Part shown: in pieces, positions 12,459 through 61,762 of the stretch
Layout of the letters: each line of letters begins with the position of its first letter
How positions within the stretch are numbered: position 1 is the stretch's first letter
NCBI RefSeq assembly: GCF_006345805.1
Contig: NC_043005.1
Span: 31,496,001-31,560,000 of the forward strand
Direction: 5' to 3'
Origin: Octopus sinensis
Taxonomy: Eukaryota
DNA length: 64,000 bases
Notes under the pieces: model-generated
The model's database searches: none
Seen by the model: only the letters and a program-made list of their open reading frames with translations
What the model was told of the DNA's origin: nothing
Program-made: the position numbers and the translations under genes

Positions 12459-13563
12459 TATATGCATGTATGCGTATGTATGAGTTCGTTTGTATGTAGG
12501 TATTCTGCATATTCATGTTTGTGTTTGTGTGTTCGTGTTTTTGTGCTTTTCTTCAGTGCGCGCGTGTGTGTATGTTTTTGCATGTGTGTGAACTTTTGTC
12601 TCCTTGTATGTGCATGTCTGTGTTTGTTTGTGCGTATGTGTTTTTGACTATGTACTGTGTCTCAATGTATGGATGTGTATCTGCATATATATGGGATATC
12701 TGTCTTCATATCTCTCCTTGTGTGAAGTGAAGTGCATGTGCTTCAGTCTTTATTTGCGTATGTGTATGTGTGCTTGTCTGTACATATTACCTATGTACCT
12801 ATCCATATGTATGTCTATCTGTTTTCATTCATATCCATTTGCCTACATACATGAGCATACATATACGTATACATACACACACATACATACATGTACGTAC
12901 ACACACATACATACATATAGTATACATACATACACACATACATACATGTACATAACAGCCCACTAACTGTTCTTCCTGTATATAAATGTAAACTGTGGGT
13001 ATGAGAGTATGATTACCAGCCACGTATATAGGGAGAGACATCTAGGACCATCGCGGAAAGACTGAATTAAAATTTGAGACAATATGACGACAAAAAACAG
13101 TCCTCCATACTCTACCAACATGGAGGCAACCTGGGTCAACTTGAGATCTGCGTTTCATCCAAGCACCCACAGGACCCAACCCTCAGAGAAATACAGGAGT
13201 ACATTCTCATAAATGAAACATCCCCAGTACTAAATAGAAAATATACGTAGTAGGTAATCAAATACATATATATATATATACCAATTATATACGTTTTTAT
13301 TATTTTTTTGCAATTTACTTAATCATTGGTATTTTATTGCTATTTTAATTTTGATATTACTATTATATGTAATTTTCTAGATGGTGTAATTTAATAGTTC
13401 ATTTGGGATTGATAAATGGTGGTTTTTTCTAATTTTTATATATATATATATATATATATTATATTGTGTGAAATTTGATTTAGTATTCTCTAAATTAAAT
13501 TTTTTCCCTGTAAGTTAGGATTAATATTCCCTCAAAATAATATAATAATTATATATATATATA

Positions 13564-13643
<80 letters not shown>

Positions 13644-13681
13644 ATATATTATCTATATATATAGACATATAGATAGATAGA

Positions 13682-13836
13682 TAGGCGCTGTAGTGGGTGT
13701 GTGGTAAGTAGCTTGCTTACCAAAGTGGTTGCGGGTTCAGTATCCTTGGGCAAGTGTCTTCTACTATAGCTCGGGCCGACCAAAGCCTTGTGAATAGATA
13801 TGTTAGACGAAACTAAAAGAAGCCTCTCGTATATAT

Positions 13837-13933
<97 letters not shown>

Positions 13934-14135
13934 GTGTGTACGTGTGTGTATGTGTGTTTGTGTGTATGTGCTTCTCCCCCACCATTTGACAACAAATTTT
14001 GGTGTGTTTAGTCCCCGTAACTTAGCTGTTCAGTGAAAGAGAGCGATAGAATAAGTACTAGACTGCAGGCAGTGCTTCAGCATGGCCGCAGTCAAATGAC
14101 TGAAGCAAATAAAAAATAAAAGAATAAAAGAAAAG
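13682..14135 (+). mobile_element. tRNA-derived SINE (family A), full length with internal (TA)n(TG)n
   Basis: Head TAGGCGC..GTGTGGTAAG..GGGTTCAG, core GGCAAGTGTCTTCTACTATAGC, microsatellite, tail CAGCATGGCCGCAGTCAAATGACTGAA. Confidence 0.8.
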
Positions 14136-18199: not shown

Positions 18200-18247
<48 letters not shown>

Positions 18248-18249
<2 letters not shown>

Positions 18250-18487
18250 CTTTTACTCTTTTACTTGTTTCAGTCATTTCACTGCAGCCATGCTGGAGCA
18301 CCGCCTTTAGTCGAGAAAATCGACCTCAGAACTTATTCTTTGTAAGCCTAGTACTTATTCTGTCGGTCTCTTTTGCCGAACCGCTAAGTTACGGAGACGT
18401 AAACACACACACCGGTTTTCAAGCGATGCTGGGGGTACAAACACAGATACACAAACATATACACACATACACATACGTATATATATA

Positions 18488-18536
<49 letters not shown>

Positions 18537-19134
18537 TATATATATATACGACGGGCTTCTTTCAGTTTCCGTCTACCAAATCTACTCACAAGGCTTTGTT
18601 CGGCCCGAGGCTATAGTAGAAGACACTTTCCAAGGTGCCACGCAGTCGGACGAAACCCAGAATCATGTTGTTGGTAAGCAAGCTACTTACCACACAGCCC
18701 TTTTACTCGTTTATTTGTTTCACTCATTTGACAGCGGCAATGCTGGAGCACCGCCTTTAGTCCAACAAATCGACCCCAGGACTTATTCTTTGTAGGCCTA
18801 ATACTTATTCTATCGGTCTTTTTTGCCAAATCGCTAAATTACGGGGACGTAGACACATCAGCACCGGTTGTCATGCAATGTTGAGGAGGGGGTACAAACA
18901 CAGACGCACAAACATACAAATACACACACAGACGCACAAATATACAAAGACACACACAGACACACACACATATATTTATATATGACGGGCTTCTTTCAGT
19001 TTCCGTCTACCAAATCTACTAATAAGGCCTTGGTCAGCCCGAGTCTATAGCAGAAGACACCACCACGCAGTGGGACTGAACCTGGAACCATGTGGTTTGT
19101 AAGCTACTTACCACACATCTACTTCTGCGCCTAT
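18248..19134 (-). mobile_element. Two tandem SINE family A copies
   Basis: Tail-microsatellite-head pattern occurs twice (18248-18700, 18700-19134). Confidence 0.8.
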
Positions 19135-19136
19135 GG

Positions 19137-19171
19137 AAAAATATGGAACGCTTCACAAATTTGCTTGTCAT
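19137..19171 (-). pseudogene. U6: 3' 35 nt of U6 snRNA fused to a SINE head
   Basis: RC ATGACAAGCAAATTTGTGAAGCGTTCCATATTTTT versus U6 ATGACACGCAAATTCGTGAAGCGTTCCATATTTTT (33/35). Confidence 0.85.
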
Positions 19172-19740
19172 ACCTCGTCTACATTAACTAGAATTTTTTT
19201 GGAGGTACAAGCGCCCTTACGCCTTAAATAATTTTAGTTTTATTTATATTGATATAAGTGTTGCTTTTTTTAGAAGCAAAGCATCTTATTTTTTCCATTT
19301 GATCGATCCTATTAAATTACACAGGAACGTCATCTATTTTTAAAAATATTAAAATAATCACTTTTTTAGGGGTGAGTGTACAATATTTGAGTGTGTATGT
19401 ATTATTCATGTATACATACTTGTTCACCGATCTGTGTGTACATACACGCACACATGTACGCACACATCTATATGTGCATGTATATAAAGATATACTTGCC
19501 TTATACGGAGAAAATGTGCTTTATGTATGTGTACTTATGTGCGTTCACGTGGTTGTTTGTGTACGTGTGTATATATGGATATATATATATATATGGGTCT
19601 GTGTGCGTATGTATATACATATATATGTGTGGTTGTTTATATGTTTTCATTTACGTGAATCGGTGCACATACATGAATCTCCATGTATGTGTGCATATGT
19701 GCATAGTTATTTGTAGCTATTGTCTGTGTATCACACACAG

Positions 19741-22206: not shown

Positions 22207-23471
22207 TTGGGTTGGCAACAAAGTTCCCGCTGTTTTTTAAAATTAAAATTTTTTAAAAGGTTTAATAAAAAATAACAGCTAATTAATCAATAATATATTC
22301 ACCCTTGTTGTTTACAACTTCCCAAAGTTCAACAAGATTTTCAATACCTCGTTGGTAGAAATCACCCGATTTCGACTCGAAAATTGATCCAACAAAGCTC
22401 TAAATTCTGCACCAGTATTGAACGAAACTCCGCGCATAGCATTTAAAAGAGATCAAAAGAGATGGAAATCCGTTGGTGCCAAATCAAGAGAGTTCGGCGG
22501 GTGTGGCAGTACTTCTCAGTCATGCGTTTGAATGGCTTTCTCGGTCATATTGGCGATATGAGGGCGGGCGTTGTTGTGCAGCAGAAGAACTCCATGCTGC
22601 TGAATAGGTCTTTTCTTTTGAATAGCAGCCAATCCATCTGTTGAACATAGAGTTCCGCGTTGACTGTTCAAGCAATTCGTAATGGATAATACCATCCCAG
22701 TCCCACCATACGCACAACATCGTTTTACGCGGATGAAGATCTTGTTTCACGCGCGGTTTCGCTTCTTTACCGGGGCTAAGCCATTCCTTGCGCTGCTTCA
22801 TATTGATGTACAGGCACCGTTTTTCGTCGCCTGTAGCGATTCAGTACAGAAATCATTGCTTGTGTCCATGGGTTGAGCGGTGACGAGCAAGCAAACTAGC
22901 GGAGATCGTGGCTCGTTGATTTTTGTTGTTGTCACTTAAAGCATGCGGAACCCATGCTCCATACTTCTGAACCTTTCCCATCGAGTGGAGATGCTTCCCT
23001 ATAGCAGTGTGGGAGCATTCCATTTTCTCTGCCAGTTCCCTTGTCGTTTGACGAGAATTTTTGTGCAAAAGATAGTTTAATCGCTGTTCACCTAACTCAA
23101 CTGGACGGCCAGAACGAGGTACGTCTTTGAGGTCAAAATTTTCATTTTTGAACTTGGCATACCAATCACGAGCGGTTCTTTCAGCTATGGTACCCACTCC
23201 ATATACAGCACAAATGTCACGAGCAACTTTTTCGGCCTTTAGAACCTTGATTAAAAGCAAAAAGAAGGAAGTGTCGAAAATGCTCGTTTTTCTTAACTTC
23301 AGATTCCATTTTAATGATCTGAAAACAAACAAAAATTAACTAAAATTAACTAGAAAAAATAGATTCCAAAATGATTCAATAATAGAATTCTCAATAAACA
23401 TAGATTCCACAATTAAAAACGCAATAAATTCCAAAATTTAAAAAGACCGCGGTAACTTAGTTGCCAACCCA

Positions 23472-23472: not shown

Positions 23473-23560
<88 letters not shown>

Positions 23561-23829
23561 TGTGTATGTGTGTGTGTGTATGTATACATATATATGCCGA
23601 CATAAAAATATCTGTCATATTCATATTAAAAACTTGTTACGTTCTTAGAGAGAGGTTCTCCGCTTTGTAGATGGAAGTCCTCTGAAATACAATAAAATAG
23701 TTTTAAATCTATATATCAAGGCTAGTCGGGCTAAATTTGATGATGTCTCCATTTTTAAGGAAGAACTTGATGTGTTGGTTAACAGTCAACGGCGTTCAAG
23801 AGCATAAAGATTAAAGTTGTAGTTGAGAA

Positions 23830-31489: not shown

Positions 31490-32775
31490 GTTTGATGTCG
31501 CTTTTATTCCATCGACGATGGAGTTTGCCAAATGCGTTGGTTGCCTTTGTAAGACGGTTAACGATTTCATCATCAAGGGTAGCGCTCAAATTCACTTTAC
31601 TACCAAGTTATTTAAATGATTTCACATAACTTAGGTCTTTCCCATGACCCTGTATAGAAGTGTCAAGAAAATTGTGAACTGGTGGTCTCTGCTTGACACT
31701 TCGGATTTGTTTAGGAATAGGGCAAGTTTGGCAGATTACTTCTGTCTTCTTTATGCTAATGGTCAAACCAAAGGCTTTACATGCAACAGAAAACCAATCT
31801 AAACGTTCCTGAGCTTCCTCTAAAGAGGTTGCTACTAGTGCAGCATCATCTGAAAAAAGTAGATCACGAATGATACTGGTGAGTAACAGTGTTCTGGCTT
31901 TGAAACGCTGATTATTGAACAGTCCCCCACTTGTTCGAAACTGAAATTTGACACCACTTAGTATGTCGCCAAAAGCATACCTCAGCTTCACTGAAAAGAA
32001 GAGTACAAACAAAACAGGAACCACAACACAACCTTGCTTTATGCCGTTTGTAACATCAAAGGATGCCGAAAATTTCCCATCAGACACGATAGCAGCCTTC
32101 ATTCACTCTTGAAAGGAGATGATAACATTCAACATCCTGTCAAGTATGCCAAGCTTTTTCAGAACTTTCTATAGTGCTTGCTGGTTAACAGTGTCGAAGG
32201 CCTTAGTAAGGTCAACGAATATCAAGAACAACTCTTGATTTTTCTCACGTACCTTCTCCGTGACCTGTCGGAGGGAAAAGATCATATCGATAGTGCCCCG
32301 ACTAGAGGGAGACCCGCACTGGGATTCTGGATAGATATTATTTACAACGTGTTTGATGACCCTGTCAAGAATGAGTCGAGCAAGAATCTTACTAGCAATA
32401 GACAGAAGCGATATTCCACAATGATTATCGCAGACAATTCTGTTACCTTTCTTCTTATATGGATGTTGACGGCCTACCTTCCAGACGTTTATGAAGAGGT
32501 CATGCATTTTCGTAAAAAGCTTCTGTCCACCATGTTTGTAAATTTCAGGCGGGATAGCATCCCTATCAGGCGCTTTACCTGAAGAGATCTGTTTAATGGA
32601 GATTACCACTTCCAAAAATGTTGACTCCAGAGACCGTTCCGGTATTACAGTGCGCTGTGGAACAGACATTATGACGTCGTCATTAGTGACTGAGGTGTAG
32701 TTCAACACGGTTTCAAAGTGATCTTTCCATCGTTTCAGGATGTCAGATTTGTCAGTCAGGAGTGTCTCTCTATTG
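31490..32775 (-). mobile_element. RTE (BovB-like) LINE reverse transcriptase fragment
   Basis: GKAPDRDAIPPE, GISLLSIASKIL, FVDLTKAFDTV, GIKQGCV, DLLFSDDAAL; stops and both ends truncated. Confidence 0.9.
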
Positions 32776-34724: not shown

Positions 34725-35066
34725 TGTACGTGTGTATGTATATATGTGTGCAAATATACAGACATATATATATATAAATATTATATTCTTTTATTTGTTT
34801 CAGTCATTTGCCTATGGCTGTGCTGGAGCATCGACTTTAGTCGAACAAATCGACCACAGCACTTATTCTTTGTTAGCCTACTACTTATACTATCGGTCTC
34901 TTTTGTCGAACCGCTAACTTACGGGAACGTAAGTACATCAGCATCGGTTGTCAAGCGATGGTAGGGGGACAAACACAGACACACAAATATATAAATACAT
35001 ACATCCATATATACATACATATCTATATATATATACATATATATATACATATACATACATATATAC

Positions 35067-35126: not shown

Positions 35127-35227
<101 letters not shown>

Positions 35228-35274
35228 GTATATGAAAGAATGGAGTTGAACGACTAGTTAACAAATATCCTTTA

Positions 35275-35357
35275 TTCTCGACATATGTTTCGAAGGCTGC
35301 ATATTTCTAATTCCGATGGAATAAGGAGTACATTATGCAGATTTCTCATCAGGAAAA
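35275..35357 (-). ncRNA. Type I hammerhead motif, extended stem II
   Basis: RC TTTTC-CTGATGA-GAAATCTGCAT..ATGCAGCCTTC-GAAACATATGTC-GAGAA. Confidence 0.75.
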
Positions 35358-36253
35358 TCAAGGAACTTATGTCGACATCAAAATGCACAAAACACTTTTA
35401 GCTGACCGCTCTCAAGGAGCCCATGGCGATAATGAGTGTCTCTTTATAATGAGTGACGTCAGAGTGGCTGAATGTAGAAGGATCTAGAAGTTTCTAAAGG
35501 TTCAAGAGTTCAAACGAAGTAGGAGGAGGGAGGCATAAGAATAGTAAGGTGAGAGAGTGCAGGTCAAAAGAATGGTGGGTTTAAATGATTTCTTTTGTGA
35601 ATGAGTTCCTGTCTGTGTGACTGTATATAACTGTCTTAATGTGTGTATGTGTGTGTCTGAATGCGTGATTGTGTTTGTGGATGGGTAGATGTTAGAAAAC
35701 TGACATCTGTGAGGTGAAAGGTTTATGTCTGTGTGTTCGATTATGTTTACTGTAGTGAAAGGAAAGTAGATAGCGAAAGGGAGAAAGAATCGGGCGAGGT
35801 GAGAGGCAACGCAAGGATGGATAGTAGTAATTGGGAATATAAGAAAATCTTTTTGAATATTGGGGTGAAATATAGCAAAAATATTTTTGGAAATCGAGGG
35901 GTTATCTATATTAGTCACTATTTATATGAGTGAAAGGTGTGTCTTTTCCAGTGTAAACACCTGTATGATCTTTCGACGATTGTGTTTATTAAAGGGCCTT
36001 TGGCGAACAAAATATGAAAAAGTTCGGAATTACAGATGCCACAAAATTCCCGTTTGATAAAGGCAGAAAATTTTGTGGCATCTGCAATTCCGAACTTTTT
36101 CATATTTTGTTCGCCAAAGGCCCTTTAATAAACACAATCGTCGAAAGATCCTACAGGTGTTAGATAAAGAGACACTCATTATCGCCATGGGCTCCTTGAG
36201 AGCGGTCAGCTAAAAGTTTTTTGTGCATTTTGATGTCGACATAAGTTCCTTGA

Positions 36254-36336
36254 TTTTCCTGATGAGAAATCTGCATAATGTACTCCTTATTCCTTCGGAA
36301 TTAGAAATATGCAGCTTTCGAAACATATGTCGAGAA
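36254..36336 (+). ncRNA. Type I hammerhead motif with canonical core
   Basis: Stem I TTTTC/GAGAA; CTGATGA; stem II GAAA/TTTC plus CTGCAT/ATGCAG; GAAA; stem III ACATATGT; GUC triplet (cut after 36331). Confidence 0.8.
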
Positions 36337-36551
36337 TAAAGGATATTTGTTAACTAGTCGTTCAACTCCATTCTTTCATATACTTATAATTTTAAAATAA
36401 ACATACAAATTTCCGCACGAAGACACGTAGTCTATGCCCTAGGGACGTAGCTTCAACCGTGTTCTTTCTGATGTGAATTTGCTACCCAGGTATCGGTTAT
36501 CTTTCGAATTATCCTTAATAAGATAATTCATTCAATTACTCAAATATATAT

Positions 36552-36609
<58 letters not shown>

Positions 36610-36776
36610 GACGGTTTTCTTTCAGTTCCATCTACCAAATCCAAGGACAAGGCTTTGGTTCGACCGAGGGTATAGTAGAAAACACTTGCTCAAGTAGCCA
36701 CGCAGTGGGACTGACCTCGGAAACCATGTGGTTGGGAAACAAGCTTCTTACCCCACAGTCACTCCTGCGCCTATGG

Positions 36777-36811
36777 AAAAATATGGAACGCTTCACGAAT
36801 TTGCTTGTCAT
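36777..36811 (-). pseudogene. U6: 3' 35 nt of U6 snRNA fused to a SINE head
   Basis: RC ATGACAAGCAAATTCGTGAAGCGTTCCATATTTTT, 34/35 to U6. Confidence 0.9.
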
Positions 36812-36888
36812 ACACAAATATATAAGTAGATATGCAAACATATATTTATGCATTTATATGTACATACAGATGGATAGATGTATAAATA

Positions 36889-36960: not shown

Positions 36961-39324
36961 ACAACAATTGAGGGTAAAATTAATTAATTAATCAATTTCA
37001 CCAAGTATTCAGTATGCAAAGGGACCAATTAAGGCGAATTCAAATTATTACATTATATAAAAGGGCTTAGTAAAATAAATTACTTTGCCGCATACTGAAC
37101 TCATTAGAAATAGCACCTAAAAAAAACTTTTTTAAAACTATTTCTAATACTTAAGAAAACCTCTCTCATATAGTGTTTGCTCAATTCAACTCACGAAAGC
37201 ATGGGGGTAGAGACATTAAAAAATCAAATGCAAAGGTTATTTGAGAACGTACGTTTCAAGATTTCAAACTCGACACTTCTATCATCAGCTCAGAACTCCC
37301 TGGTTTGGATTTGAAAACACTGAAAGTGGGAGCATACCTTTTCGGCTTCTTATCGCTTCTGAAGATCTGCTCGAAACTAACAGTGCCAGCAAACTCAAAA
37401 ATGCAAGCGAAGAATTTCTGCTCTCCCCTTTCCACCAGCGTGGGTTAAAATCAGTAAACACTATGCTTTTTTCGGTAAAATCCGAGGCATTATATAGAGA
37501 GAGATGAATTATAATTTCAACAATTGAGGGTAAAATTAATTAATTAATCAATTTCACCAAGTATTCAGTATGCAAAGGGACCAATTAAGGCGAATTCAAA
37601 TTATTACATTATATAAAAGGGCTTAGTAAAATAAATTACTTTGCCGCATACTGAACTCATTAGAAATAGCAGCAAAAAAAACTTTTTTAAAACTATTTCT
37701 AATACTTAAAGAAAACCTCTCTCATATAGTGTTTGCTCAATTCAACTCACGAAAGTATGGGGGTAGAGACATTAAAACATCAAATGCAAAGGTTATTTGA
37801 GAACGTAACTTTCAAGATTAGTCAAACTCGACCCTTCTATCATCAGCTCAGAACTCCCTGGTTTGGATTTGAAAACACTGAAAGTGGGAGCATACCTTTT
37901 CGGCTTCTTATCGCTTCTGAAGATCTGCTCGAAACTAACAGTGCCAGCAAACTCAAAAATGCAAGCGAAGAATTTCTGCTCTCCCCTTTCCACCAGCGTG
38001 GGTTAAAATCAGTAAACACTATGCTTTTTTCGGTAAAATCCGAGGCATTATATAGAGAGAGATAAATTATAATTTCAACAATTCAGGGTAAAATTAATTA
38101 ATTAATCAATTTCATCAAGTATTCAGTATGCAAAGGGACCAATTAAGGCGAATTCAAATTATTACATTATATAAAAGGCGTATTACATTATATATAATGT
38201 AATAATTTGAATTCGCCTTAATTGGTCCCTTTGCATACTAAATACTTGGTGTGAATTGATTAATTAATTAATTTTACCCTCAATTGTTGAAATTATAATT
38301 CATCTCTCTCTATATAATGCCTCGGATTTTACCGAAAAAAGCATAGTGTTTACTGATTTTAACCCACGCTGGTGGAAAGGGGAGAGCAGAAATTCTTCGC
38401 TTGCATTTTTGAGTTTGCTGGCACTGTTAGTTTCGAGCAGATCTTCAGAAGCGATAAGAAGCCGAAAAGGTATGCTCCCACTTTCAGTGTTTTCAAATCC
38501 AAACCAGGGAGTTCTGAGCTGATGATAGAAGTGTCGAGGTTGACTAATCTTGAAACGTACGTTCTCAAATAACCTTTGCATTTGATTTTTTAATGTCTCT
38601 ACCCCCATACTTTCGTGAGTTGAATTGAGCAAACACTATATGAGAGAGGTTTTTTTAAGTATTAGAAATAGTTTTTAAAAAGTTTTTTTAGCTGCTATTT
38701 CTAATGAGTTCAGTATGCGGCAAAGTAATTTATTTTACTAAGCCCTTTTATATAATGTAATAATTTGAATTCGCCTTAATTGGTCCCTTTGCATACTGAA
38801 TACTTGGTGTGAAATTGATTATTAATTAATTTTACCCTCAATTGTTGAAATTATAATTCATCTCTCTCTATATAATGCCTCGGATTTTACCGAAAAAAGC
38901 ATAGTGTTTACTGATTTTAACCCACGCTGGTGGAAAGGGGAGAGCAGAAATTCTTCGCTTGCATTTTTGAGTTGCTGGCACTGTTAGTTTCGAGCAGATC
39001 TTCAGAAGCGATAAGAAGCCGAAAAGGTATGCTCCCACTTTCAGTGTTTTCAAATCCAAACCAGGGAGTTCTGAGCTGATGATAGAAGGTCGAGTTTCGA
39101 GTTTGACTAATCTTGAAACGTACGTTCTCAAATAACCTTTGCATTTGATTTTTTAATGTCTCTACCCCCATACTTTCGTGAGTTGAATTGAGCAAACACT
39201 ATATGAGAGAGGTTTTCTTTAAGTATTAGAAATAGTTTTAAAAAAGTTTTTTTAGCTGCTATTTCTAATGAGTTCAGTATGCGGCAAAGTAATTTATTTT
39301 ACTAAGCCCTTTTATATAATGTAA
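36961..39324. repeat. ~2.3-kb palindromic array of ~556-bp hammerhead-bearing units
   Basis: Units start at 36962, 37518, 38076; orientation flips at about 38180-38195; motifs at 37242-37292(-), 37798-37850(-), 38515-38567(+), 39072-39130(+). Confidence 0.9.
38515..38567 (+). ncRNA. Hammerhead motif, best-preserved copy in the array
   Basis: TGAG-CTGATGA-T-AGA..GTCG/TGAC..TCT-T-GAAAC-GTAC-GTT-CTCA; U.U at 10.1-11.1. Confidence 0.6.
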
Positions 39325-42664: not shown

Positions 42665-44345
42665 TAACTTAGAATAACTTAGTAACTTAGAAAGGTTTTG
42701 GCCAGTATTGGCCCAGGCCATGTCTAACTTAATAGCACCACCTAGCGAAGTCTTTCAATTCAGGATTTGGGCACCGAGGCCCATTCGAGCAGAGAGTTAT
42801 TGTTTGCGGAGACATATCCGGGTGTGGGTGGTTGTCCGTGACTGTTTGAAGGAATTTGTCCAAAGACTTCTTGAATTTTGTGTGGTCAGTTTCTGTTTTG
42901 ACGTGTCGTGGTGTAACGTTGAAGAGAGCGAGTCCAATTGAGGTGAAATAATTGTGCAGTATTGTCGTTATGTGATGCGATTTAGATTTTTGTTATGGAC
43001 GGATGGCACGTGGTCCAAGCCTTGGATGTATTTTGAAGGTGATGCCAACATCATTCGGGCAGTGCTGATGGAATATTTTCCACATCATACAGATAATGTA
43101 GCGTTCACGGCGTCGTTGGAGTGAATACAGTTTCAGCTTCTCTAGTCTACCCCAGTAGTCAAGGTTTGACATGCCATCTATCTTTTTTGTGATTGACCTT
43201 TGGGGAGCTTCAATTCTCATAATATTTTGTTTCGTGTAGGGAGACCACAGTGGACAGCAGTATTCAAGGTGGGTCGGGCAAAAGTGGAGAACAGAAGGAT
43301 AATAGTGTGGGAATCTCTCGACTGGAAGGTTCTGAGAATCCAGGAACACATTCTGCGGGCCATGTCAACTTTGCTGCTTATATGTGTAGCCCAGCTTATG
43401 TTGTTGTCCACTGCTACTCCCAAGTCTCTGATGTTGTTGGACGCCATGAGAATTTCTCCAGAAGGAAGGGAGTATGGGATTTTCAGAGCGTCCTCCTTTC
43501 CAAAGTGGATCAGTTCGAATTTGTCTTCGTTTAGCAACATGTTGTTCTTTTCCGCCCTTTGGACAACAGCCAGTAGGTCTGACTGAAGGCCTATTCGGTC
43601 ATCCACGCCATTGATGACCTTCTGGAGCTTGGAATCATCAGCGAAGGTTCTGATGTTACTGTGTTTGATGGTGTCAGTAATATCATTTATGTAGATGATG
43701 AAGAGAAGTGGGCCAAACACAGTGCCTTGTGGGACACCACTGCTGACTTTGGCTGGGCTGGATTTGACTCCTTCGACTACAACATGTTGGGTTCTGTTAG
43801 ACAGGAAGCACTTGATCCACTGCAACAGCCTTCCAGTGACACCAATATTGGACAGCTTTCTCAAAAGGATCTTATGATCAACCCTGTCAAAGGCCTTGCT
43901 GAAATCAAGGTAGATGACATCAGTGTTGGAACCCTCTCCCAAGGCTCTCAAAATGTCATCAAAATGATGCAGTAGCTGCGTCAGGCAATCTCTTCCATTA
44001 CGGAATCCATGCTGGTTGGAGTTCAGCATATTATGACTCTCAAGGAAGTTAGTCATACGCGATCTCAGCACTCTCTCAAATACCTTAATGATATGAGAGG
44101 TGAATGAGATTGGACGGTAATTCACGGCAAGCGATTTGTTTCCTTTTTTGAAAACTGGGACAACAGACTGGGATAGGTCTTCTGGTATATATCCAGCATC
44201 CAGTGAGTTCCGCCACAGATTGGCTAGAGGGGGTGCAAGTTGATTTTGACACATCTTCAAGACACAAGCAGGGAACCTATCGGGACCTACTGCTGAATTA
44301 TGCTTCATTTCCTTTATTGCTGCTATATACAAATCCGACGAACGG
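42665..44345 (-). mobile_element. CR1-like LINE, 5'-truncated, with CTAAGTTA-type repeat tail
   Basis: ORF 43217..44332: NYRPISFTS, QHGFRNGR, YLDFSKAFDRV, SGVPQG, FADD; one frameshift; tail at 42665-42692. Confidence 0.9.
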
Positions 44346-47480: not shown

Positions 47481-47639
47481 AATTAGAAACTACTTCATTA
47501 AATTTGATAGAAAACCTGCTGAGCACATACAAAAAGGATGCGTGGCGTTCGATCATATAATAATATAATTAATATATAAATATATGCATATATATACATA
47601 CATATATGTACATACCTACATATATATGTATATATACAG

Positions 47640-54894: not shown

Positions 54895-57800
54895 TTTTTT
54901 TTTCTTCTTTCAAATTTGCTTCCATTTCTTGCCGAGTGTCTTCCCGACTCCTAGGGCAAAGAAACTTATAGTATACATTGGTAGGCCATTAAACCAAACT
55001 CAGTAGTTCGTTCATTTTTTTTTTTTTTAATTAAATTAAAATACATGAGCAGCAACAGTTCTCACATCGACAATGCTCTTCTCAATACGTGTGATGTACC
55101 AGTTAAGACAATCTTTTGCACTTCTTGCAGGGATGGTAAGCCAGGGATCATTCTCATATAATTTTCAGTTCCCTTCTTGATCATTCCTAGTGCTCCTACG
55201 ATCACTGGTATTGTAACCGCCTTGAGATGCCACATTTTCTCAATTTCAATGAGTAGGTCTTTATATTTTCTGAGCTTGTCAAACTCTTTCGCTGAGATAT
55301 TATGATCACAGGGGATGCTCATGTCGATCAATAAGCAAACTTTATTGTTTTGGTCTTTCACAGCAATATCTGGTTTATTGGCCTTGATGGTTCGGTCTGT
55401 ATGTACTGGAAAGTCCCACAGAATGGTTACATTTTCTCCTTCAGTTACAGCCTCAGGGTGGTGATTATACCACTTGTCGGCAGTTTTGATATTGTAATGC
55501 CGACTTATTAGCCAGTGGAGATATTGGCCAACTCTGTCATGTCTTAATTTATACTCCACTGGTGCTAAGACTTTACATCCAGAGATTAGGTGGTCCACTG
55601 TTTCAATCATGTCGTTGCAGAATCGGCATTTTGGGTCTGCTCCATTTTTCATCACATTGGCCTGGTAGTTCCGGGTTAATAGGCTTTGATCTTGAGCAGC
55701 CAGGATGAAACCTTCGCTCTCTGCTTTTAGCCCTGAGCTCCGTAGCCACTGATGGGTTTGCTTCTGGTCAACATCAGCTTGTTTGCTGCGGGCCACATAT
55801 TTGCCGTGCAGAGGTTTCTCCTCCCACCTATCAGCCAATTGCTCGTGCGCTTTTTTCATTGCCATCATTTTCACCTTCTTTGCAACAATAGTTGCCGTAC
55901 TTCCCTCGGGTTGTTCAGTTTGGGTATCCTGCACGAGATCAATAGCAAATGTTTTGCTTTCCTTGATGATAGAATGAAGCTTCTTTCGTCTCTCGTGATT
56001 TTCCACGAGCTTTAGCATCCAGTCATTCGATATTTCGAGATATTTGGCCAGCCCAATTGTGGTTGTTTTGTAAGCTAGTTCAAATTGGATCAGGCCTCGA
56101 CCTCCTTGGGCTCTGGGAAGGTAAAGGCGATCTACGTCTGCCTTTGGGTGGTGCATCCTATTACAACTCAGCAGCTTGCGTATTTTTCTATCTATATTCT
56201 TTACTTCACTCATATTCCAGTTCAACACATTGTAGCTATAAGTAACAACTGGAACTGCTAAGGAATTTATAGCTAACACCTTGTTACGTGCATTTAGTTC
56301 AGATTTCAGGACTGCACGAACTCTCCTATAACATTCCTTCCTGATTTTCCCTTTCATGCTTACATGCTGAATACCAGAGCCTTCATTTATCCCTAAATAT
56401 TTGTATGTTTGTTCTTGCTCAAGCTCTCTTATGACTGTGTCAACATCTAACACGACTGAATTTGTGGTCTTCACTTTCCCTTTCTGGAAAGTGGCCTTGG
56501 CACACTTCTCAAGTCCAAACTCCATCCCGATGTCATCGCTGAATGCTTTCACGGTGCGCAATAGGCCTTCAAGTTCATTATTGTCTTTACCATAAAGTTT
56601 TAAGTCATCCATATAAAATAGATGGCTTATTTTTTTATTGGCAATTTTATACCCATACCCTGTTCTGTTTAATTCACTTGTAAGGGGTATTAGGGCTACG
56701 CAGAATATTAAAGGTGAAAGTGAGTCACCTTGAAAAATTCCACAGTTGATGTTTATATTTTCTGAGGCAAGTACTCCATTAGAGTGGTATAATTGGAGAT
56801 TCGTATTCCACAACGACATATTGTGCTTCGGGAAGTTTGAAATCACAGGGGAAATTTTGAAGATGTCCAGCGATCTCAAGATCCATGGATGCGGTATACT
56901 GTCGAAGGCCTTTTTGTAGTCAATCCATGCGGTGCTGAGATTTCTGCGCTTGTTGTGACAGTTCTCAAGGATCATACGATTGATTAGCAGTTGATCTTTG
57001 CATCCGTAAGAGCCTCGGTGGCACCCTTTTTGTTCAATGGGGAAAATATCGTTCTTCTCCATGAATGCATATGTTTTCTCCGCCAGGATAGATGTTAGGA
57101 TTTTATACGTGGTGGATAGACAGGTTATAGGCCGATAGTTTTTTGGAAGGTTAGTTTCGTTATTCTTTGGGAGTAGGTAAGTAATGCCACTTGCTAACCA
57201 TTCAGGTGTTTTCTTTGGGTCTCTCATAATTCCATTGAGCAGCTGAACTAGCTTACCGTGTGCGCATGGGAGCGATGCGAGCCAGAAATTCGGCACCCTA
57301 TCTTTACCGGGGGATTTCCAATTATGGCCTTCGTGAGTGCCTTTCTTAGGTCTGCTATTGTGATGTCTTCCCATGCTTGTTGTTGTAATTTTGGTAGGAT
57401 CCTTCAGTTTGTATAATCCAGTCTGCATTTATGTTGTACGTCTTCTTGTCACTCCAAATCCTTTTCCAAAAGTTTTGAACTTCTTCCATGGGAGGGGGGT
57501 CTTTAACGGTTACTTTCTCCTTCCCTATTTCTCTGTAGAATTTTTTGGCATTGGATGTGAACAGCTTATTTTGCTTGTAAAACTTGTTTCTCTTCTCAAA
57601 TCTTCGTATTCTTTGGGCTTTTGCTTGGACTTTTTGTTTCAGCGTTTCTTTTATTGATATCAGTTCTTCTCTTGGTGAGGATCCAAATTTTCTCTTCATC
57701 TTTCTTCCTGTTCTGGATCTTACATCAATTCCACATATTAGTTCATTTAATATTAATATTTCCCCTCTCATAAATTCAATCTCTTTTTCAATTTTACTTC

Positions 57801-58720
57801 TCCAGGTTTGATTTCTTCCCAGGTTTTGTTTTCTTTGTTTTTTCGGGGGCATTCAGCTGGTTTCAATTGCCCTAGCAAAAGCGTAAATAATTTCATTTAA
57901 CTCAGTAAAATCAGGTTTTAATTCTCGTATTATTTCATTTGTTACATAGTTGCCAATTTGGATTTGTTTTTTATTTTGGTTTGTATTTGAGAGTCTTACA
58001 ACTTCAAGCGTATTCAGGATTTTCTGCCTCATTTCTGCCATAGACTCTCTGTGTTCTTCAGCAAATGCGAGATCTTCAGTTACTGTTGTTTTTTCGTTTT
58101 CCTGGCTATCTTTAACAGGTACAATAGAATTTCTTGTATCTTCAGGCCTTTGCGTACTTTGGTCAGATGGCAGTCTTTCAATTAAGCCTCGTGGCGGGCT
58201 ATACTGTTCATCTGATTCTTCATTTCCTTTGTGTCTTATATTTATGTCATTTTCCGTTGCGTGCTTGATCGCGCTTATTTCACTGTCTGTGAGTCTGTTA
58301 TTTCTAAGGATATCCCTCCTCACATTTGCTAATTTGTTCTCGTCCAAATAGGGCCTACTGTCTTGATTCCGTGTTCTCCATATACTGTAAGAGTTTGCGG
58401 TGTGTCTCTCTTGAGATGGCCTACCTAATGCATAGTAATAAGCGTATATTACTTCTTTATACTCTTCTCGGGTCCATTTGTTCCGCTTACATTTTTCTTT
58501 CTGTGGTGGTTGTGGTGGTGAACTTGGAGGGCTCGAGTTGGGGGATTTCCCGTTCAAGTGACCATCCATGTCCGTATTCGGAGAAGAGTTTGTGCCAGTT
58601 GATGACTTTTCGATCCCAGGCTGGCTCTTCCCTGGGGGACGCGCTTCCAGATTAACCATAGGACAAGCGATTTGGTATACTAATTTAGTTTTCCTTTTAG
58701 TTTCCAAAAATATTTTGGTG
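54894..58720 (-). mobile_element. Near-full-length R4/Dong-like non-LTR retrotransposon
   Basis: Myb-like KWTREEYKEVIYAYY; RT (WIDYKKAFDS, GIFQGDSLSP, YMDD); CRFC..HLISGC; RHD; ANKPDI; IPVIVGALG; 3' UTR abuts (TAA)n at 54842-54893. Confidence 0.95.
55062..57428 (-). CDS. RT plus restriction-like endonuclease ORF of the R4/Dong-like element
   Basis: 788-aa open frame; upstream parts in 57355..57852 and 57853..58707. Confidence 0.9.
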   Translation of the reverse strand: MQTGLYKLKDPTKITTTSMGRHHNSRPKKGTHEGHNWKSPGKDRVPNFWLASLPCAHGKLVQLLNGIMRDPKKTPEWLASGITYLLPKNNETNLPKNYRPITCLSTTYKILTSILAEKTYAFMEKNDIFPIEQKGCHRGSYGCKDQLLINRMILENCHNKRRNLSTAWIDYKKAFDSIPHPWILRSLDIFKISPVISNFPKHNMSLWNTNLQLYHSNGVLASENININCGIFQGDSLSPLIFCVALIPLTSELNRTGYGYKIANKKISHLFYMDDLKLYGKDNNELEGLLRTVKAFSDDIGMEFGLEKCAKATFQKGKVKTTNSVVLDVDTVIRELEQEQTYKYLGINEGSGIQHVSMKGKIRKECYRRVRAVLKSELNARNKVLAINSLAVPVVTYSYNVLNWNMSEVKNIDRKIRKLLSCNRMHHPKADVDRLYLPRAQGGRGLIQFELAYKTTTIGLAKYLEISNDWMLKLVENHERRKKLHSIIKESKTFAIDLVQDTQTEQPEGSTATIVAKKVKMMAMKKAHEQLADRWEEKPLHGKYVARSKQADVDQKQTHQWLRSSGLKAESEGFILAAQDQSLLTRNYQANVMKNGADPKCRFCNDMIETVDHLISGCKVLAPVEYKLRHDRVGQYLHWLISRHYNIKTADKWYNHHPEAVTEGENVTILWDFPVHTDRTIKANKPDIAVKDQNNKVCLLIDMSIPCDHNISAKEFDKLRKYKDLLIEIEKMWHLKAVTIPVIVGALGMIKKGTENYMRMIPGLPSLQEVQKIVLTGTSHVLRRALSM

Positions 58721-61680: not shown

Positions 61681-61762
61681 AACGGCTGGCTATGAGATTC
61701 GAACTCACACCTCCGTGATTACGCGTCGCGGTGCTCTGAACCATTAAGCTAAACCGTTCGTT
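61681..61762 (-). pseudogene. tRNA-like sequence (pseudogene or short SINE) followed by a T6 tract
   Basis: D-arm GCTT/GAGC with AATGG, T-arm GTGAG-TTCGAAT-CTCAT, anticodon loop CG-CGT-AA; imperfect acceptor stem. Confidence 0.55.

What the first reader, a model, noticed from the sequence alone, without database searches (positions are those of the whole stretch)
19081..19175. SINE with a U6 snRNA-derived 5' cap, copy 1
Seen: on the minus strand the last 35 nt of U6, including its terminal TTTTT, are joined by CC to the family A tRNA head (ATAGGCGCAG..). The same junction recurs at 36774-36813 with different flanks. Both copies share the same non-U6 change (ACACGC to ACAAGC) and the same 5' boundary (GT|ATGAC). 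Established: U6/L1 chimeric retrocopies exist in vertebrates and U1/U2-headed SINEU exists in crocodilians. Inference: a propagating U6-tRNA composite SINE subfamily, not a one-off chimera. I do not know whether it has been described.
Basis: partly seen in the sequence, partly recalled or inferred. Interest (0 to 1): 0.8.

Follow-up and report, generated by a model that had tools for sequence, protein, structure and literature searches.

The report
U6 tail fused to octopus SINE
Two copies of a common octopus short interspersed repeat carry the last 35 bases of the U6 spliceosomal RNA on their front end, joined in exactly the same way; this is a retrotransposition by-product of a kind already known in vertebrates, and whether it has spread as its own subfamily is unproven.

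Summary
On the minus strand, 19171..19137 and 36811..36777 match U6 snRNA nt 73-107 with 2 and 1 mismatches. Each match runs through the terminal T5, then CC, then the exact canonical first base of an octopus-type composite SINE (ATAGGCGCAG...). Both copies share the 5' boundary (GT|ATGAC) and a C>A change at an otherwise conserved U6 position (human C79). Their flanks are unrelated, so this is not a segmental duplication.

The best reading is a U6-SINE chimeric retrocopy. A LINE reverse transcriptase reached the 5' end of a full-length SINE RNA, added two bases, and jumped to the 3' end of U6. The two copies most likely descend from one such chimera.

The step from there to "a propagating composite SINE subfamily" is only partly supported:
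- There are only two copies.
- About 100 kb sampled from Octopus bimaculoides and O. sinensis held about ten full-length heads and no U6 piece.
- The SINE's internal promoter should start transcription downstream of the leader.
- The leader carries a Pol III terminator (T5).
- The two SINE bodies differ by about 19-20% while the leaders differ by one base.

5'-truncated U6 chimeras with SINEs and with stringent LINEs are described in platypus, lizard and opossum. This is therefore a new member of a known kind, in a cephalopod.

The parts
19137..19171 (-). Copy 1 leader: U6 snRNA nt 73-107 (33/35 to human U6; C79>A shared with copy 2, plus one private CpG>TpG), ending in T5. The two bases 5' of it (19172-19173, GT) are also shared with copy 2.
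   Evidence: blastn; Rfam U6 alignment; sequence
19135..19136 (-). Copy 1 CC filler between the U6 T5 and SINE base 1
18984..19134 (-). Copy 1 SINE head and body, starting at the canonical first base ATAGGCGCAG. Box-A-like and box-B-like motifs are present. About 10% diverged from the consensus, with 4-nt and 10-nt deletions.
18891..18983 (-). Copy 1 internal (TA)/(TG)-rich simple-repeat spacer typical of this SINE
   Evidence: same layout in other copies
18700..18890 (-). Copy 1 SINE 3' part, ending ...GAAACAAATAAACGAGTAAAAG
18247..18699 (-). Copy 4: a 5'-truncated SINE (starting at consensus position 15) that abuts the tail of copy 1 head-to-tail. It could be part of one multi-jump insertion or a separate event.
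36777..36811 (-). Copy 2 leader: U6 nt 73-107 (34/35; only the shared C79>A), ending in T5. The shared GT lies at 36812-36813.
36775..36776 (-). Copy 2 CC filler
36609..36774 (-). Copy 2 SINE head and body, from canonical base 1. It carries the older-looking variant states TAAGAAG and GTTTCCCAA (subfamily form GCTTCCCAA), and its box-B-like motif is damaged.
34781..34972 (-). Copy 2 SINE 3' part. It is separated from the body by the internal (TA)n, which was split by a later insertion (35201-36410 plus 36411-36544).
13681..14123 (+). Copy 3: the only other SINE in the window that keeps base 1. It has no U6 leader and starts ATAGGCGCTG after (GATA)n. Used for comparison.

Best explanation
These are chimeric retrocopies of U6 snRNA and a SINE. 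During LINE-mediated target-primed reverse transcription of a full-length SINE RNA, the reverse transcriptase reached the RNA's 5' end (A of ATAGGCGCAG). It added two untemplated bases (CC in the sense strand), jumped end-to-end to the 3' end of a U6 snRNA, and copied its last 35-37 nt before the cDNA was joined to the target. The two copies in this window are not independent accidents. They descend from one such chimera, or from one U6-led source RNA, that was copied at least twice. They therefore represent a lineage of unknown size that carries a U6-derived 5' extension. The U6 piece is a passenger with no promoter role. Shown: U6 identity, the exact junction at SINE base 1, the shared derived characters, and the unrelated flanks. 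Inferred: template jump as the mechanism, common descent, and how a leader-containing RNA was made again. That last step needs either transcription from upstream that reads through T5, or homologous template switching onto a U6-led RNA.
For: The U6 match is highly significant and limited to nt 73-107. At least six SINE copies in O. bimaculoides and O. sinensis loci, plus copy 3 here, begin exactly at ATAGG with unrelated upstream DNA. The U6+CC therefore sits on the true 5' end of a full-length SINE RNA, as an end-to-end template jump predicts. The two copies share four independent arbitrary characters: the U6 5' boundary with a preceding GT, T5, the CC filler, and C79>A at a conserved U6 position. 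The flanks are unrelated over 5 kb on both sides. Literature: template switching from LINE or SINE RNA to U6 is general among non-LTR elements. With stringent LINEs (L2, RTE, CR1) the U6 part is usually 5'-truncated and TSDs are short or absent, and U6/Mon-1, U6/AnolisSINE2 and 5'-truncated U6/RTESINE1 chimeras exist (PMC4476161). Shared 5' extensions that mark SINE sub-lineages are described for SINEU-2 (PMC4494074). My own inference: two unlinked copies 17.6 kb apart are very unlikely if only a handful exist in a genome of a few Gb, which I have assumed for an octopod. This argues for at least hundreds to thousands of copies. At around 10^4 copies, finding none in 100 kb is still expected.
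Against: There are only two copies. No U6 piece or junction occurs in about 100 kb of two Octopus genomes holding about ten full-length heads. The canonical start lies about 13 nt upstream of the box-A-like motif, so the internal promoter would not transcribe the leader, and T5 is a Pol III terminator (established knowledge). The leader should therefore be lost at each generation. The SINE bodies differ by about 19-20% and carry different variant states in the head (TAAGTAG/CTTAC versus TAAGAAG/TTCCC). The two copies share only 2 minority states in the 3' part. No TSD was found to prove that the U6 piece lies inside the insertion.
Confidence: 0.55

Rival explanations
1. Recurrent independent formation. 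Each copy arose separately when the reverse transcriptase jumped from a different SINE RNA to the same kind of donor, an expressed U6 variant with A79. A reproducible stop inside the U6 internal stem-loop and a reproducible two-base addition would then give identical products.
For: The two SINE bodies look like different or older versus younger variants, and the leader is far less diverged than the bodies, as if it were added late onto sources that had already diverged. In vertebrates U6 chimeras arise repeatedly, and with stringent LINEs almost all are 5'-truncated. In SINEU-2, U1-like 5' additions occurred many times on different subfamilies.
Against: The same boundary, the same GT, the same CC and the same substitution at a conserved U6 position would all have to coincide. 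In SINEU-2 the independently added pieces differ in their end points by up to 22 nt. The obvious candidate for a stop, m2G72, is reported as conserved in vertebrates, and its enzyme as absent from Drosophila and lower eukaryotes (PMC11014329). Copy 2's box-B-like motif is damaged, so a source that had already diverged this way would be poorly transcribed.
Confidence: 0.22
2. A one-off chimera was copied locally at the DNA level, by segmental duplication or by ectopic gene conversion of the 5' end of a neighbouring SINE.
For: The two copies are only 17.6 kb apart and in the same orientation. The nearly identical 51-nt 5' block against diverged bodies is the pattern a short conversion tract would leave.
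Against: There is no similarity in 5 kb of flank on either side. The sequence immediately upstream of GT|ATGAC is unrelated in the two copies. A conversion tract needs homology on its upstream side, and none exists there.
Confidence: 0.06
3. A source SINE sits 2 nt downstream of a U6 (pseudo)gene. Read-through transcripts from the U6 promoter carry U6-CC-SINE and are retrotransposed, here twice, with 5' truncation at nt 73.
For: This explains CC (gene flank), A79 (a variant gene copy), the constant junction, and how the leader could be re-transcribed on variants of different age from one evolving locus. Master-flank-derived 5' extensions are documented for SINEU-2B.
Against: It needs read-through of T5 and two independent truncations at the same base. 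No U6 gene or longer U6 piece was seen anywhere in the sampled DNA. It does not explain why the leader is less diverged than the body.
Confidence: 0.12
4. The match is chance similarity or an assembly artefact, and the piece is not U6-derived.
For: None beyond the sub-threshold Rfam score (19.8 bits against a gathering score of 44), which is expected for a 35-nt fragment.
Against: blastn E values of 1e-12 and 3e-10. The 25-mer junction occurs twice, with zero matches in shuffles. The two loci have different surroundings.
Confidence: 0.01

Closest known systems
U6/LINE and U6/SINE chimeric retrocopies (Buzdin 2002; Garcia-Perez 2007; 'Group IV' snRNA pseudogenes of Doucet et al. 2015, PMC4476161)
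   Same: U6 lies in sense orientation with its intact U-tract 3' end fused directly to the 5' side of a LINE-mobilised element. With stringent LINE partners (platypus L2/Mon-1, opossum RTE/RTESINE1, turkey CR1, Anolis SINE2) the U6 part is usually 5'-truncated and TSDs are short or undetectable, as here.
   Different: The host is a cephalopod, and I found no such report for molluscs in the held library. The partner is a full-length SINE joined at its exact first base. Two loci share one junction, whereas classical chimeras are one-off events with individual junctions.
SINEU of crocodilians and its snRNA-derived 5' extensions (Kojima 2015, PMC4494074)
   Same: An snRNA-derived sequence is added onto the 5' end of a SINE by template jump. 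Groups of copies share a 31-42-nt 5' extension that marks a source lineage. The open question of how a head without an internal promoter is transcribed is the same.
   Different: SINEU uses U1 or U2 5' parts, not a U6 3' end. It has dozens to thousands of copies and a Tx1 partner with target preference. Here n = 2, the piece contains a Pol III terminator, and the partner LINE is unidentified.
Octopus composite SINE (the abundant Octopus-specific family; tRNA-derived octopus SINEs were first described by Ohshima and Okada 1994, cited in PMC4758252)
   Same: Both copies are ordinary members downstream of base 1: a box-A/box-B head, a body, an internal microsatellite, and a roughly 190-nt 3' part ending in AAAAGAGT-type repeats. 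They are 84-90% identical to a consensus that matches O. bimaculoides and O. sinensis copies at 92-97%.
   Different: Canonical copies have nothing conserved upstream of ATAGG.
Multi-jump (tripartite) chimeric retrogenes (Magnaporthe, PMC2104539)
   Same: The arrangement U6 piece, then full SINE, then 5'-truncated SINE (19171 to 18247, minus strand) could be one insertion made with two template jumps.
   Different: This was not shown. The two SINEs could be sequential insertions, and no TSD brackets the trio.

Membership tests
U6-retroelement chimeric retrocopy (template-switch or ligation class) | U6 sequence in sense orientation immediately 5' of a LINE or SINE sequence | tested here: met
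U6-retroelement chimeric retrocopy (template-switch or ligation class) | The U6 3' end, including the U-tract, is retained at the junction | tested here: met
   T5 is present in both copies and aligns to the last U6 model positions
U6-retroelement chimeric retrocopy (template-switch or ligation class) | A single TSD brackets U6 plus partner | tested here: inconclusive
   There are no convincing direct repeats. The best case is an 8-mer, TATATTTG, in AT-rich DNA for copy 2, and nothing for copy 1. The family gives weak or variable TSDs.
U6-retroelement chimeric retrocopy (template-switch or ligation class) | Each chimera is an independent event with its own junction | tested here: not met
   The two loci share boundary, filler and a substitution
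SINE subfamily with an snRNA-derived 5' head or extension (SINEU-like) | snRNA-derived sequence at the 5' terminus, shared by copies at unrelated loci | tested here: met
   Two loci with unrelated flanks; n = 2 only
SINE subfamily with an snRNA-derived 5' head or extension (SINEU-like) | Many copies genome-wide that form their own clade | not testable with these tools
   The source genome is not searchable here. There were 0 hits in about 100 kb of two Octopus genomes and 22 kb of Argonauta, and 0 relevant hits in the metagenome, prokaryote and viral collections.
SINE subfamily with an snRNA-derived 5' head or extension (SINEU-like) | The source RNA includes the snRNA-derived part | not testable with these tools
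   The sequence argues against the standard route. The canonical start is at ATAGG, about 13 nt upstream of the box-A-like motif, and the leader ends in T5.
Genuine U6 snRNA gene | Full-length U6 (about 107 nt) reaching the Rfam gathering score | tested here: not met
   Only nt 73-107 are present; 19.8 bits against 44
tRNA-derived SINE | Head recognisable as tRNA-like (cloverleaf or covariance-model hit) | tested here: not met
   ARAGORN finds nothing in the window or in the consensus, and the Rfam tRNA model gives no hit on a 95% consensus copy
tRNA-derived SINE | Internal box A and box B at tRNA-like spacing | tested here: inconclusive
   By eye only: TGGCTGTGTGG at 14-24 (10/11 to TRGCNNAGTGG) and GGTTCAGTCCC at 57-67 (alignment)
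Octopus composite SINE family | Canonical 5' end, body, internal microsatellite and 3' part | tested here: met

The most novel reading that the evidence does not exclude
In this octopod genome a SINE lineage with hundreds to thousands of members propagates together with a 37-39-nt leader made from the 3' end of U6. It would be the first U6-derived SINE 5' module and the first snRNA-capped SINE outside crocodilians. It would imply that its source RNAs start upstream of the tRNA-type start site and read through a T5 terminator, or that the leader spreads between SINE variants by homologous template switching.
Probability: 0.3. Interest if true: 0.55.

Novelty: new member of a known kind. Interest (0 to 1): 0.35.

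Why it matters
U6-retroelement chimeras are footprints of reverse-transcriptase template jumping. They have served as markers of LINE activity in vertebrates. Finding one on a cephalopod SINE extends the phenomenon to molluscs and to the unidentified LINE that drives the most abundant octopus repeat.

If a census shows a real U6-led lineage, it would be a natural case of a SINE acquiring a new 5' module. It would also pose a concrete question about how a leader containing a Pol III terminator is re-transcribed. If the census shows only a few copies, this is an ordinary by-product of retrotransposition.

Tried and rejected
1. I searched for the junction outside the window. The metagenome scan with GCGTTCCATATTTTN{0,10}GGCGCAG gave 8 loci. 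All read as unrelated sequence with no U6 or SINE context. The genome contigs and viral-contig scans gave 0. These collections do not hold cephalopod genomes, so the result says nothing about abundance.

2. I tried to reach the source genome through window-encoded TE proteins. The LINE RT (788 aa) and the RT fragment (371 aa) have no near-identical entries; the best hits are 68% and 59% (Argonauta hians). The mariner fragment gave Octopus proteins, and these yielded four Octopus loci totalling about 100 kb. Two look-ups were not on record. One ENA contig was not octopus, and the Argonauta locus lacks the SINE head.

3. A TSD search by longest shared k-mers was inconclusive in AT-rich, microsatellite-rich flanks.

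4. I considered m2G72 of U6 as a reverse-transcription roadblock that could explain the boundary at nt 73. The modification exists in vertebrates (PMC10415138), but it and its enzyme are reported as absent from Drosophila and lower eukaryotes (PMC11014329). I dropped it as an explanation for an octopod.

5. RtcB-type ligation of U6 to a 5'-OH RNA is the model for U6/L1 chimeras cited in PMC11838501. It fits poorly here, because the partner starts at the primary-transcript 5' end and there is a 2-nt filler. It is not excluded.

6. A U6-gene-targeting insertion (Dada- or Tx1-like target specificity, recalled from memory) is rejected, because no U6 sequence lies upstream of nt 71-73.

7. Supplementary tables of Doucet 2015 do not list the platypus U6 truncation points.

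8. Nearly all hits in the whole-window Rfam scan are microsatellite-driven or palindrome-driven miRNA look-alikes.

Full report
**What is there**

Read on the minus strand, the region at 19173..18700 is:
- GT;
- 35 nt that match U6 snRNA nt 73-107 (ATGACAAGCAAATTTGTGAAGCGTTCCATATTTTT);
- CC;
- a complete copy of a composite SINE, made of a head and body of about 150 nt starting ATAGGCGCAG, a (TA)/(TG)-rich spacer, and a 3' part of about 190 nt ending ...GAAACAAATAAACGAGTAAAAG.

The second locus, 36813 downward, has the same GT-U6(35)-CC-ATAGGCGCAG. Its SINE is also complete. However, its internal (TA)n was split by a later insertion of about 1.3 kb, an element with 247-nt terminal inverted repeats at 35201-36410. 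As a result the 3' part lies at 34972..34781.

**Check of the observation**

It gives two significant hits only, both to nt 73-107: 34/35 with E 1.4e-12, and 33/35 with E 3.4e-10.
- The Rfam U6 model aligns the leader to its last 35 positions. The shared C>A falls on a conserved consensus position.
- By my numbering of human U6, the changed base is C79.
- The 25-mer that spans the junction is present exactly twice and never in shuffled sequence.
- The 5-kb flanks on both sides of the two copies are unrelated, so this is not a segmental duplication.
- The one weak point is the label "tRNA head". ARAGORN and the Rfam tRNA model do not recognise the head, even in a near-consensus copy or in the consensus. 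Only a box-A-like motif (positions 14-24) and a box-B-like motif (57-67) are visible.

**Whose genome, and what is the SINE's normal 5' end**

TE proteins encoded in the window have their best named relatives in Argonauta hians and Octopus species. Through Octopus mariner-like proteins I fetched about 100 kb of O. bimaculoides (L009, L011, L012) and O. sinensis (L010) DNA.

The SINE is abundant there. A consensus I recalled from memory matches those copies at 92-97%. At least six copies begin exactly at ATAGG(C/A)... with unrelated upstream DNA, as does copy 3 in the window.

So ATAGG is the true 5' end of the SINE RNA, about 13 nt upstream of the box-A-like motif. This is the usual geometry of a Pol III start on a type-2 promoter (established knowledge). 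The U6 piece plus CC is therefore an addition onto the end of a full-length SINE RNA.

**Mechanism**

The anatomy has four features: the intact U6 3' end with T5, two filler bases, the partner starting at its base 1, and U6 truncated at its 5' side. This is what end-to-end template jumping of a non-LTR reverse transcriptase produces.

- Doucet et al. (PMC4476161) show that switching from LINE or SINE RNA to U6 is general among non-LTR clades.
- With stringent LINEs (L2, RTE, CR1), almost all the U6 parts are 5'-truncated and TSDs are 1-9 bp or undetectable.
- U6/Mon-1, U6/AnolisSINE2 and a 5'-truncated U6/RTESINE1 chimera exist.
- The ligation route proposed for U6/L1 (cited in PMC11838501) fits less well, because the partner starts at its primary 5' end and there is a filler.

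I could not define TSDs for either copy. The direct test of whether the U6 piece lies inside the insertion therefore remains open, although nothing places it outside.

**One origin or two**

The copies share the U6 boundary with the same two preceding bases, the T5, the CC and the C79>A change. In SINEU-2, independent snRNA additions differ in their end points by up to 22 nt (PMC4494074). An identical product twice over is hard to obtain independently.

I considered a modification-induced stop at m2G72, immediately 5' of the boundary. That modification and its enzyme are reported as conserved in vertebrates and absent from Drosophila (PMC11014329). I therefore favour common descent from one chimera.

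**What speaks against a simple "propagating subfamily"**

1. There are only two copies. The roughly ten full-length heads in the 100 kb from two Octopus genomes have no U6 piece.
2. A U6-led copy transcribed from its own internal promoter would start at ATAGG and lose the leader. The leader's T5 would also stop Pol III arriving from upstream.
3. The bodies differ at about 20% of aligned positions and the 3' parts at about 18%. They carry different variant states in the head. Meanwhile the 51-nt 5' block differs at 2 positions (2/51 against 62/320, Fisher p = 0.0046).
   - Substitutions are concentrated at G/C sites and the leader is AT-rich.
   - It is real enough to note and I cannot explain it fully.
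4. The copies share only two minority states in the 3' part.

These points fit several routes better than a classical master gene:
- late or repeated addition of the same leader;
- spread of the leader by homologous template switching between SINE RNAs;
- a source that sits behind a U6 (pseudo)gene.

I list these routes as rivals or variants.

**How abundant could it be**

This is inference, and it assumes a genome of a few Gb, which I did not measure. If copies land at random, two unlinked copies within 18 kb are very improbable unless there are at least hundreds, more likely thousands. At about 10^4 copies, one expects about 0.4 per 100 kb, so the empty external sample does not contradict this. 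At about 10^5 copies it would. The window's SINE copies also differ from the O. bimaculoides and O. sinensis copies at one consensus position (GAGTAGATTT against GAGTGGATTT), so the species may be different.

**Comparison with what is known, and novelty**

The structure belongs to the known class of U6-retroelement chimeras. The shared junction makes it resemble the 5'-extension sub-lineages of SINEU. I found no report of U6-SINE chimeras or U6-derived SINE modules in cephalopods in the held literature.

I rate it a new member of a known kind, of moderate interest to TE specialists. It would rise to a new variant if a census shows a real U6-led lineage.

**In passing**

Copy 1's tail abuts a 5'-truncated SINE (copy 4, 18699..18247). 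The trio of U6 piece, full SINE and truncated SINE could be a single multi-jump insertion like the tripartite chimeras of Magnaporthe (PMC2104539). This is untested.

Noticed in passing
window 35201-36410: An element of about 1.2 kb with 247-nt terminal inverted repeats (96% complementary) and an internal 93-nt palindrome (35956-36161). It is inserted in the internal (TA)n of SINE copy 2. The palindrome accounts for the Rfam MIR2606 and mir-1010 look-alike hits.
   Followed up: partly
window 37614-38750: A large foldback element. It has inverted arms of 403 nt (98% complementary) plus outer arms of 101 nt and a central 64-nt hairpin. The mirrored 110-aa ORFs at 37733-38065 (+) and 38300-38632 (-) and the top Rfam 'mir-2513' hits (38130-38234) all come from it.
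   Followed up: partly
window 18247-19173: A head-to-tail SINE dimer. Full-length copy 1 (with its U6 leader) is joined at its tail (..GTAAAAG) directly to a copy truncated at consensus position 15 (GGCTGTGTGG..). This could be one insertion with two template jumps, or a tail-targeted second insertion.
   Followed up: partly
window 61688-61755 (-): A tRNA-like sequence scoring 34.2 bits with Rfam tRNA (gathering score 29), followed by a T6 run. ARAGORN does not call it. It may be a tRNA pseudogene or the head of another SINE family.
   Followed up: no
window 55062-58707 (-): A near-intact non-LTR retrotransposon with a 788-aa RT ORF and upstream ORFs of 165 and 284 aa. The closest proteins are only 68% identical, from marine ENA and Logan assemblies. 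It does not share the SINE 3' tail, so it is not the obvious partner.
   Followed up: partly
window 43217-44332 (-) and 31608-32708 (-): Further RT fragments. The 371-aa ORF is 59% identical to a hypothetical protein of Argonauta hians, which supports an octopod origin for the window.
   Followed up: partly
window 22853-23332 (-): A mariner/Mos1-type transposase N-terminal fragment, 76% identical to an O. bimaculoides 'SETMAR-like' protein.
   Followed up: partly
window SINE copies versus L009-L012: SINE copies in the window keep most consensus CpGs despite 7-14% divergence. Comparably or less diverged copies in the O. sinensis and O. bimaculoides loci have lost most CpGs to TpG/CpA. This may be a regional or species difference in methylation-driven decay.
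   Followed up: no
window, many sites (e.g. 12844-12916, 23538-23608, 47569-47639): Dozens of sub-threshold Rfam 'miRNA' hits (mir-297, mir-3149, mir-1277, mir-466) are (TG)/(TA) microsatellites, not RNA genes.
   Followed up: yes
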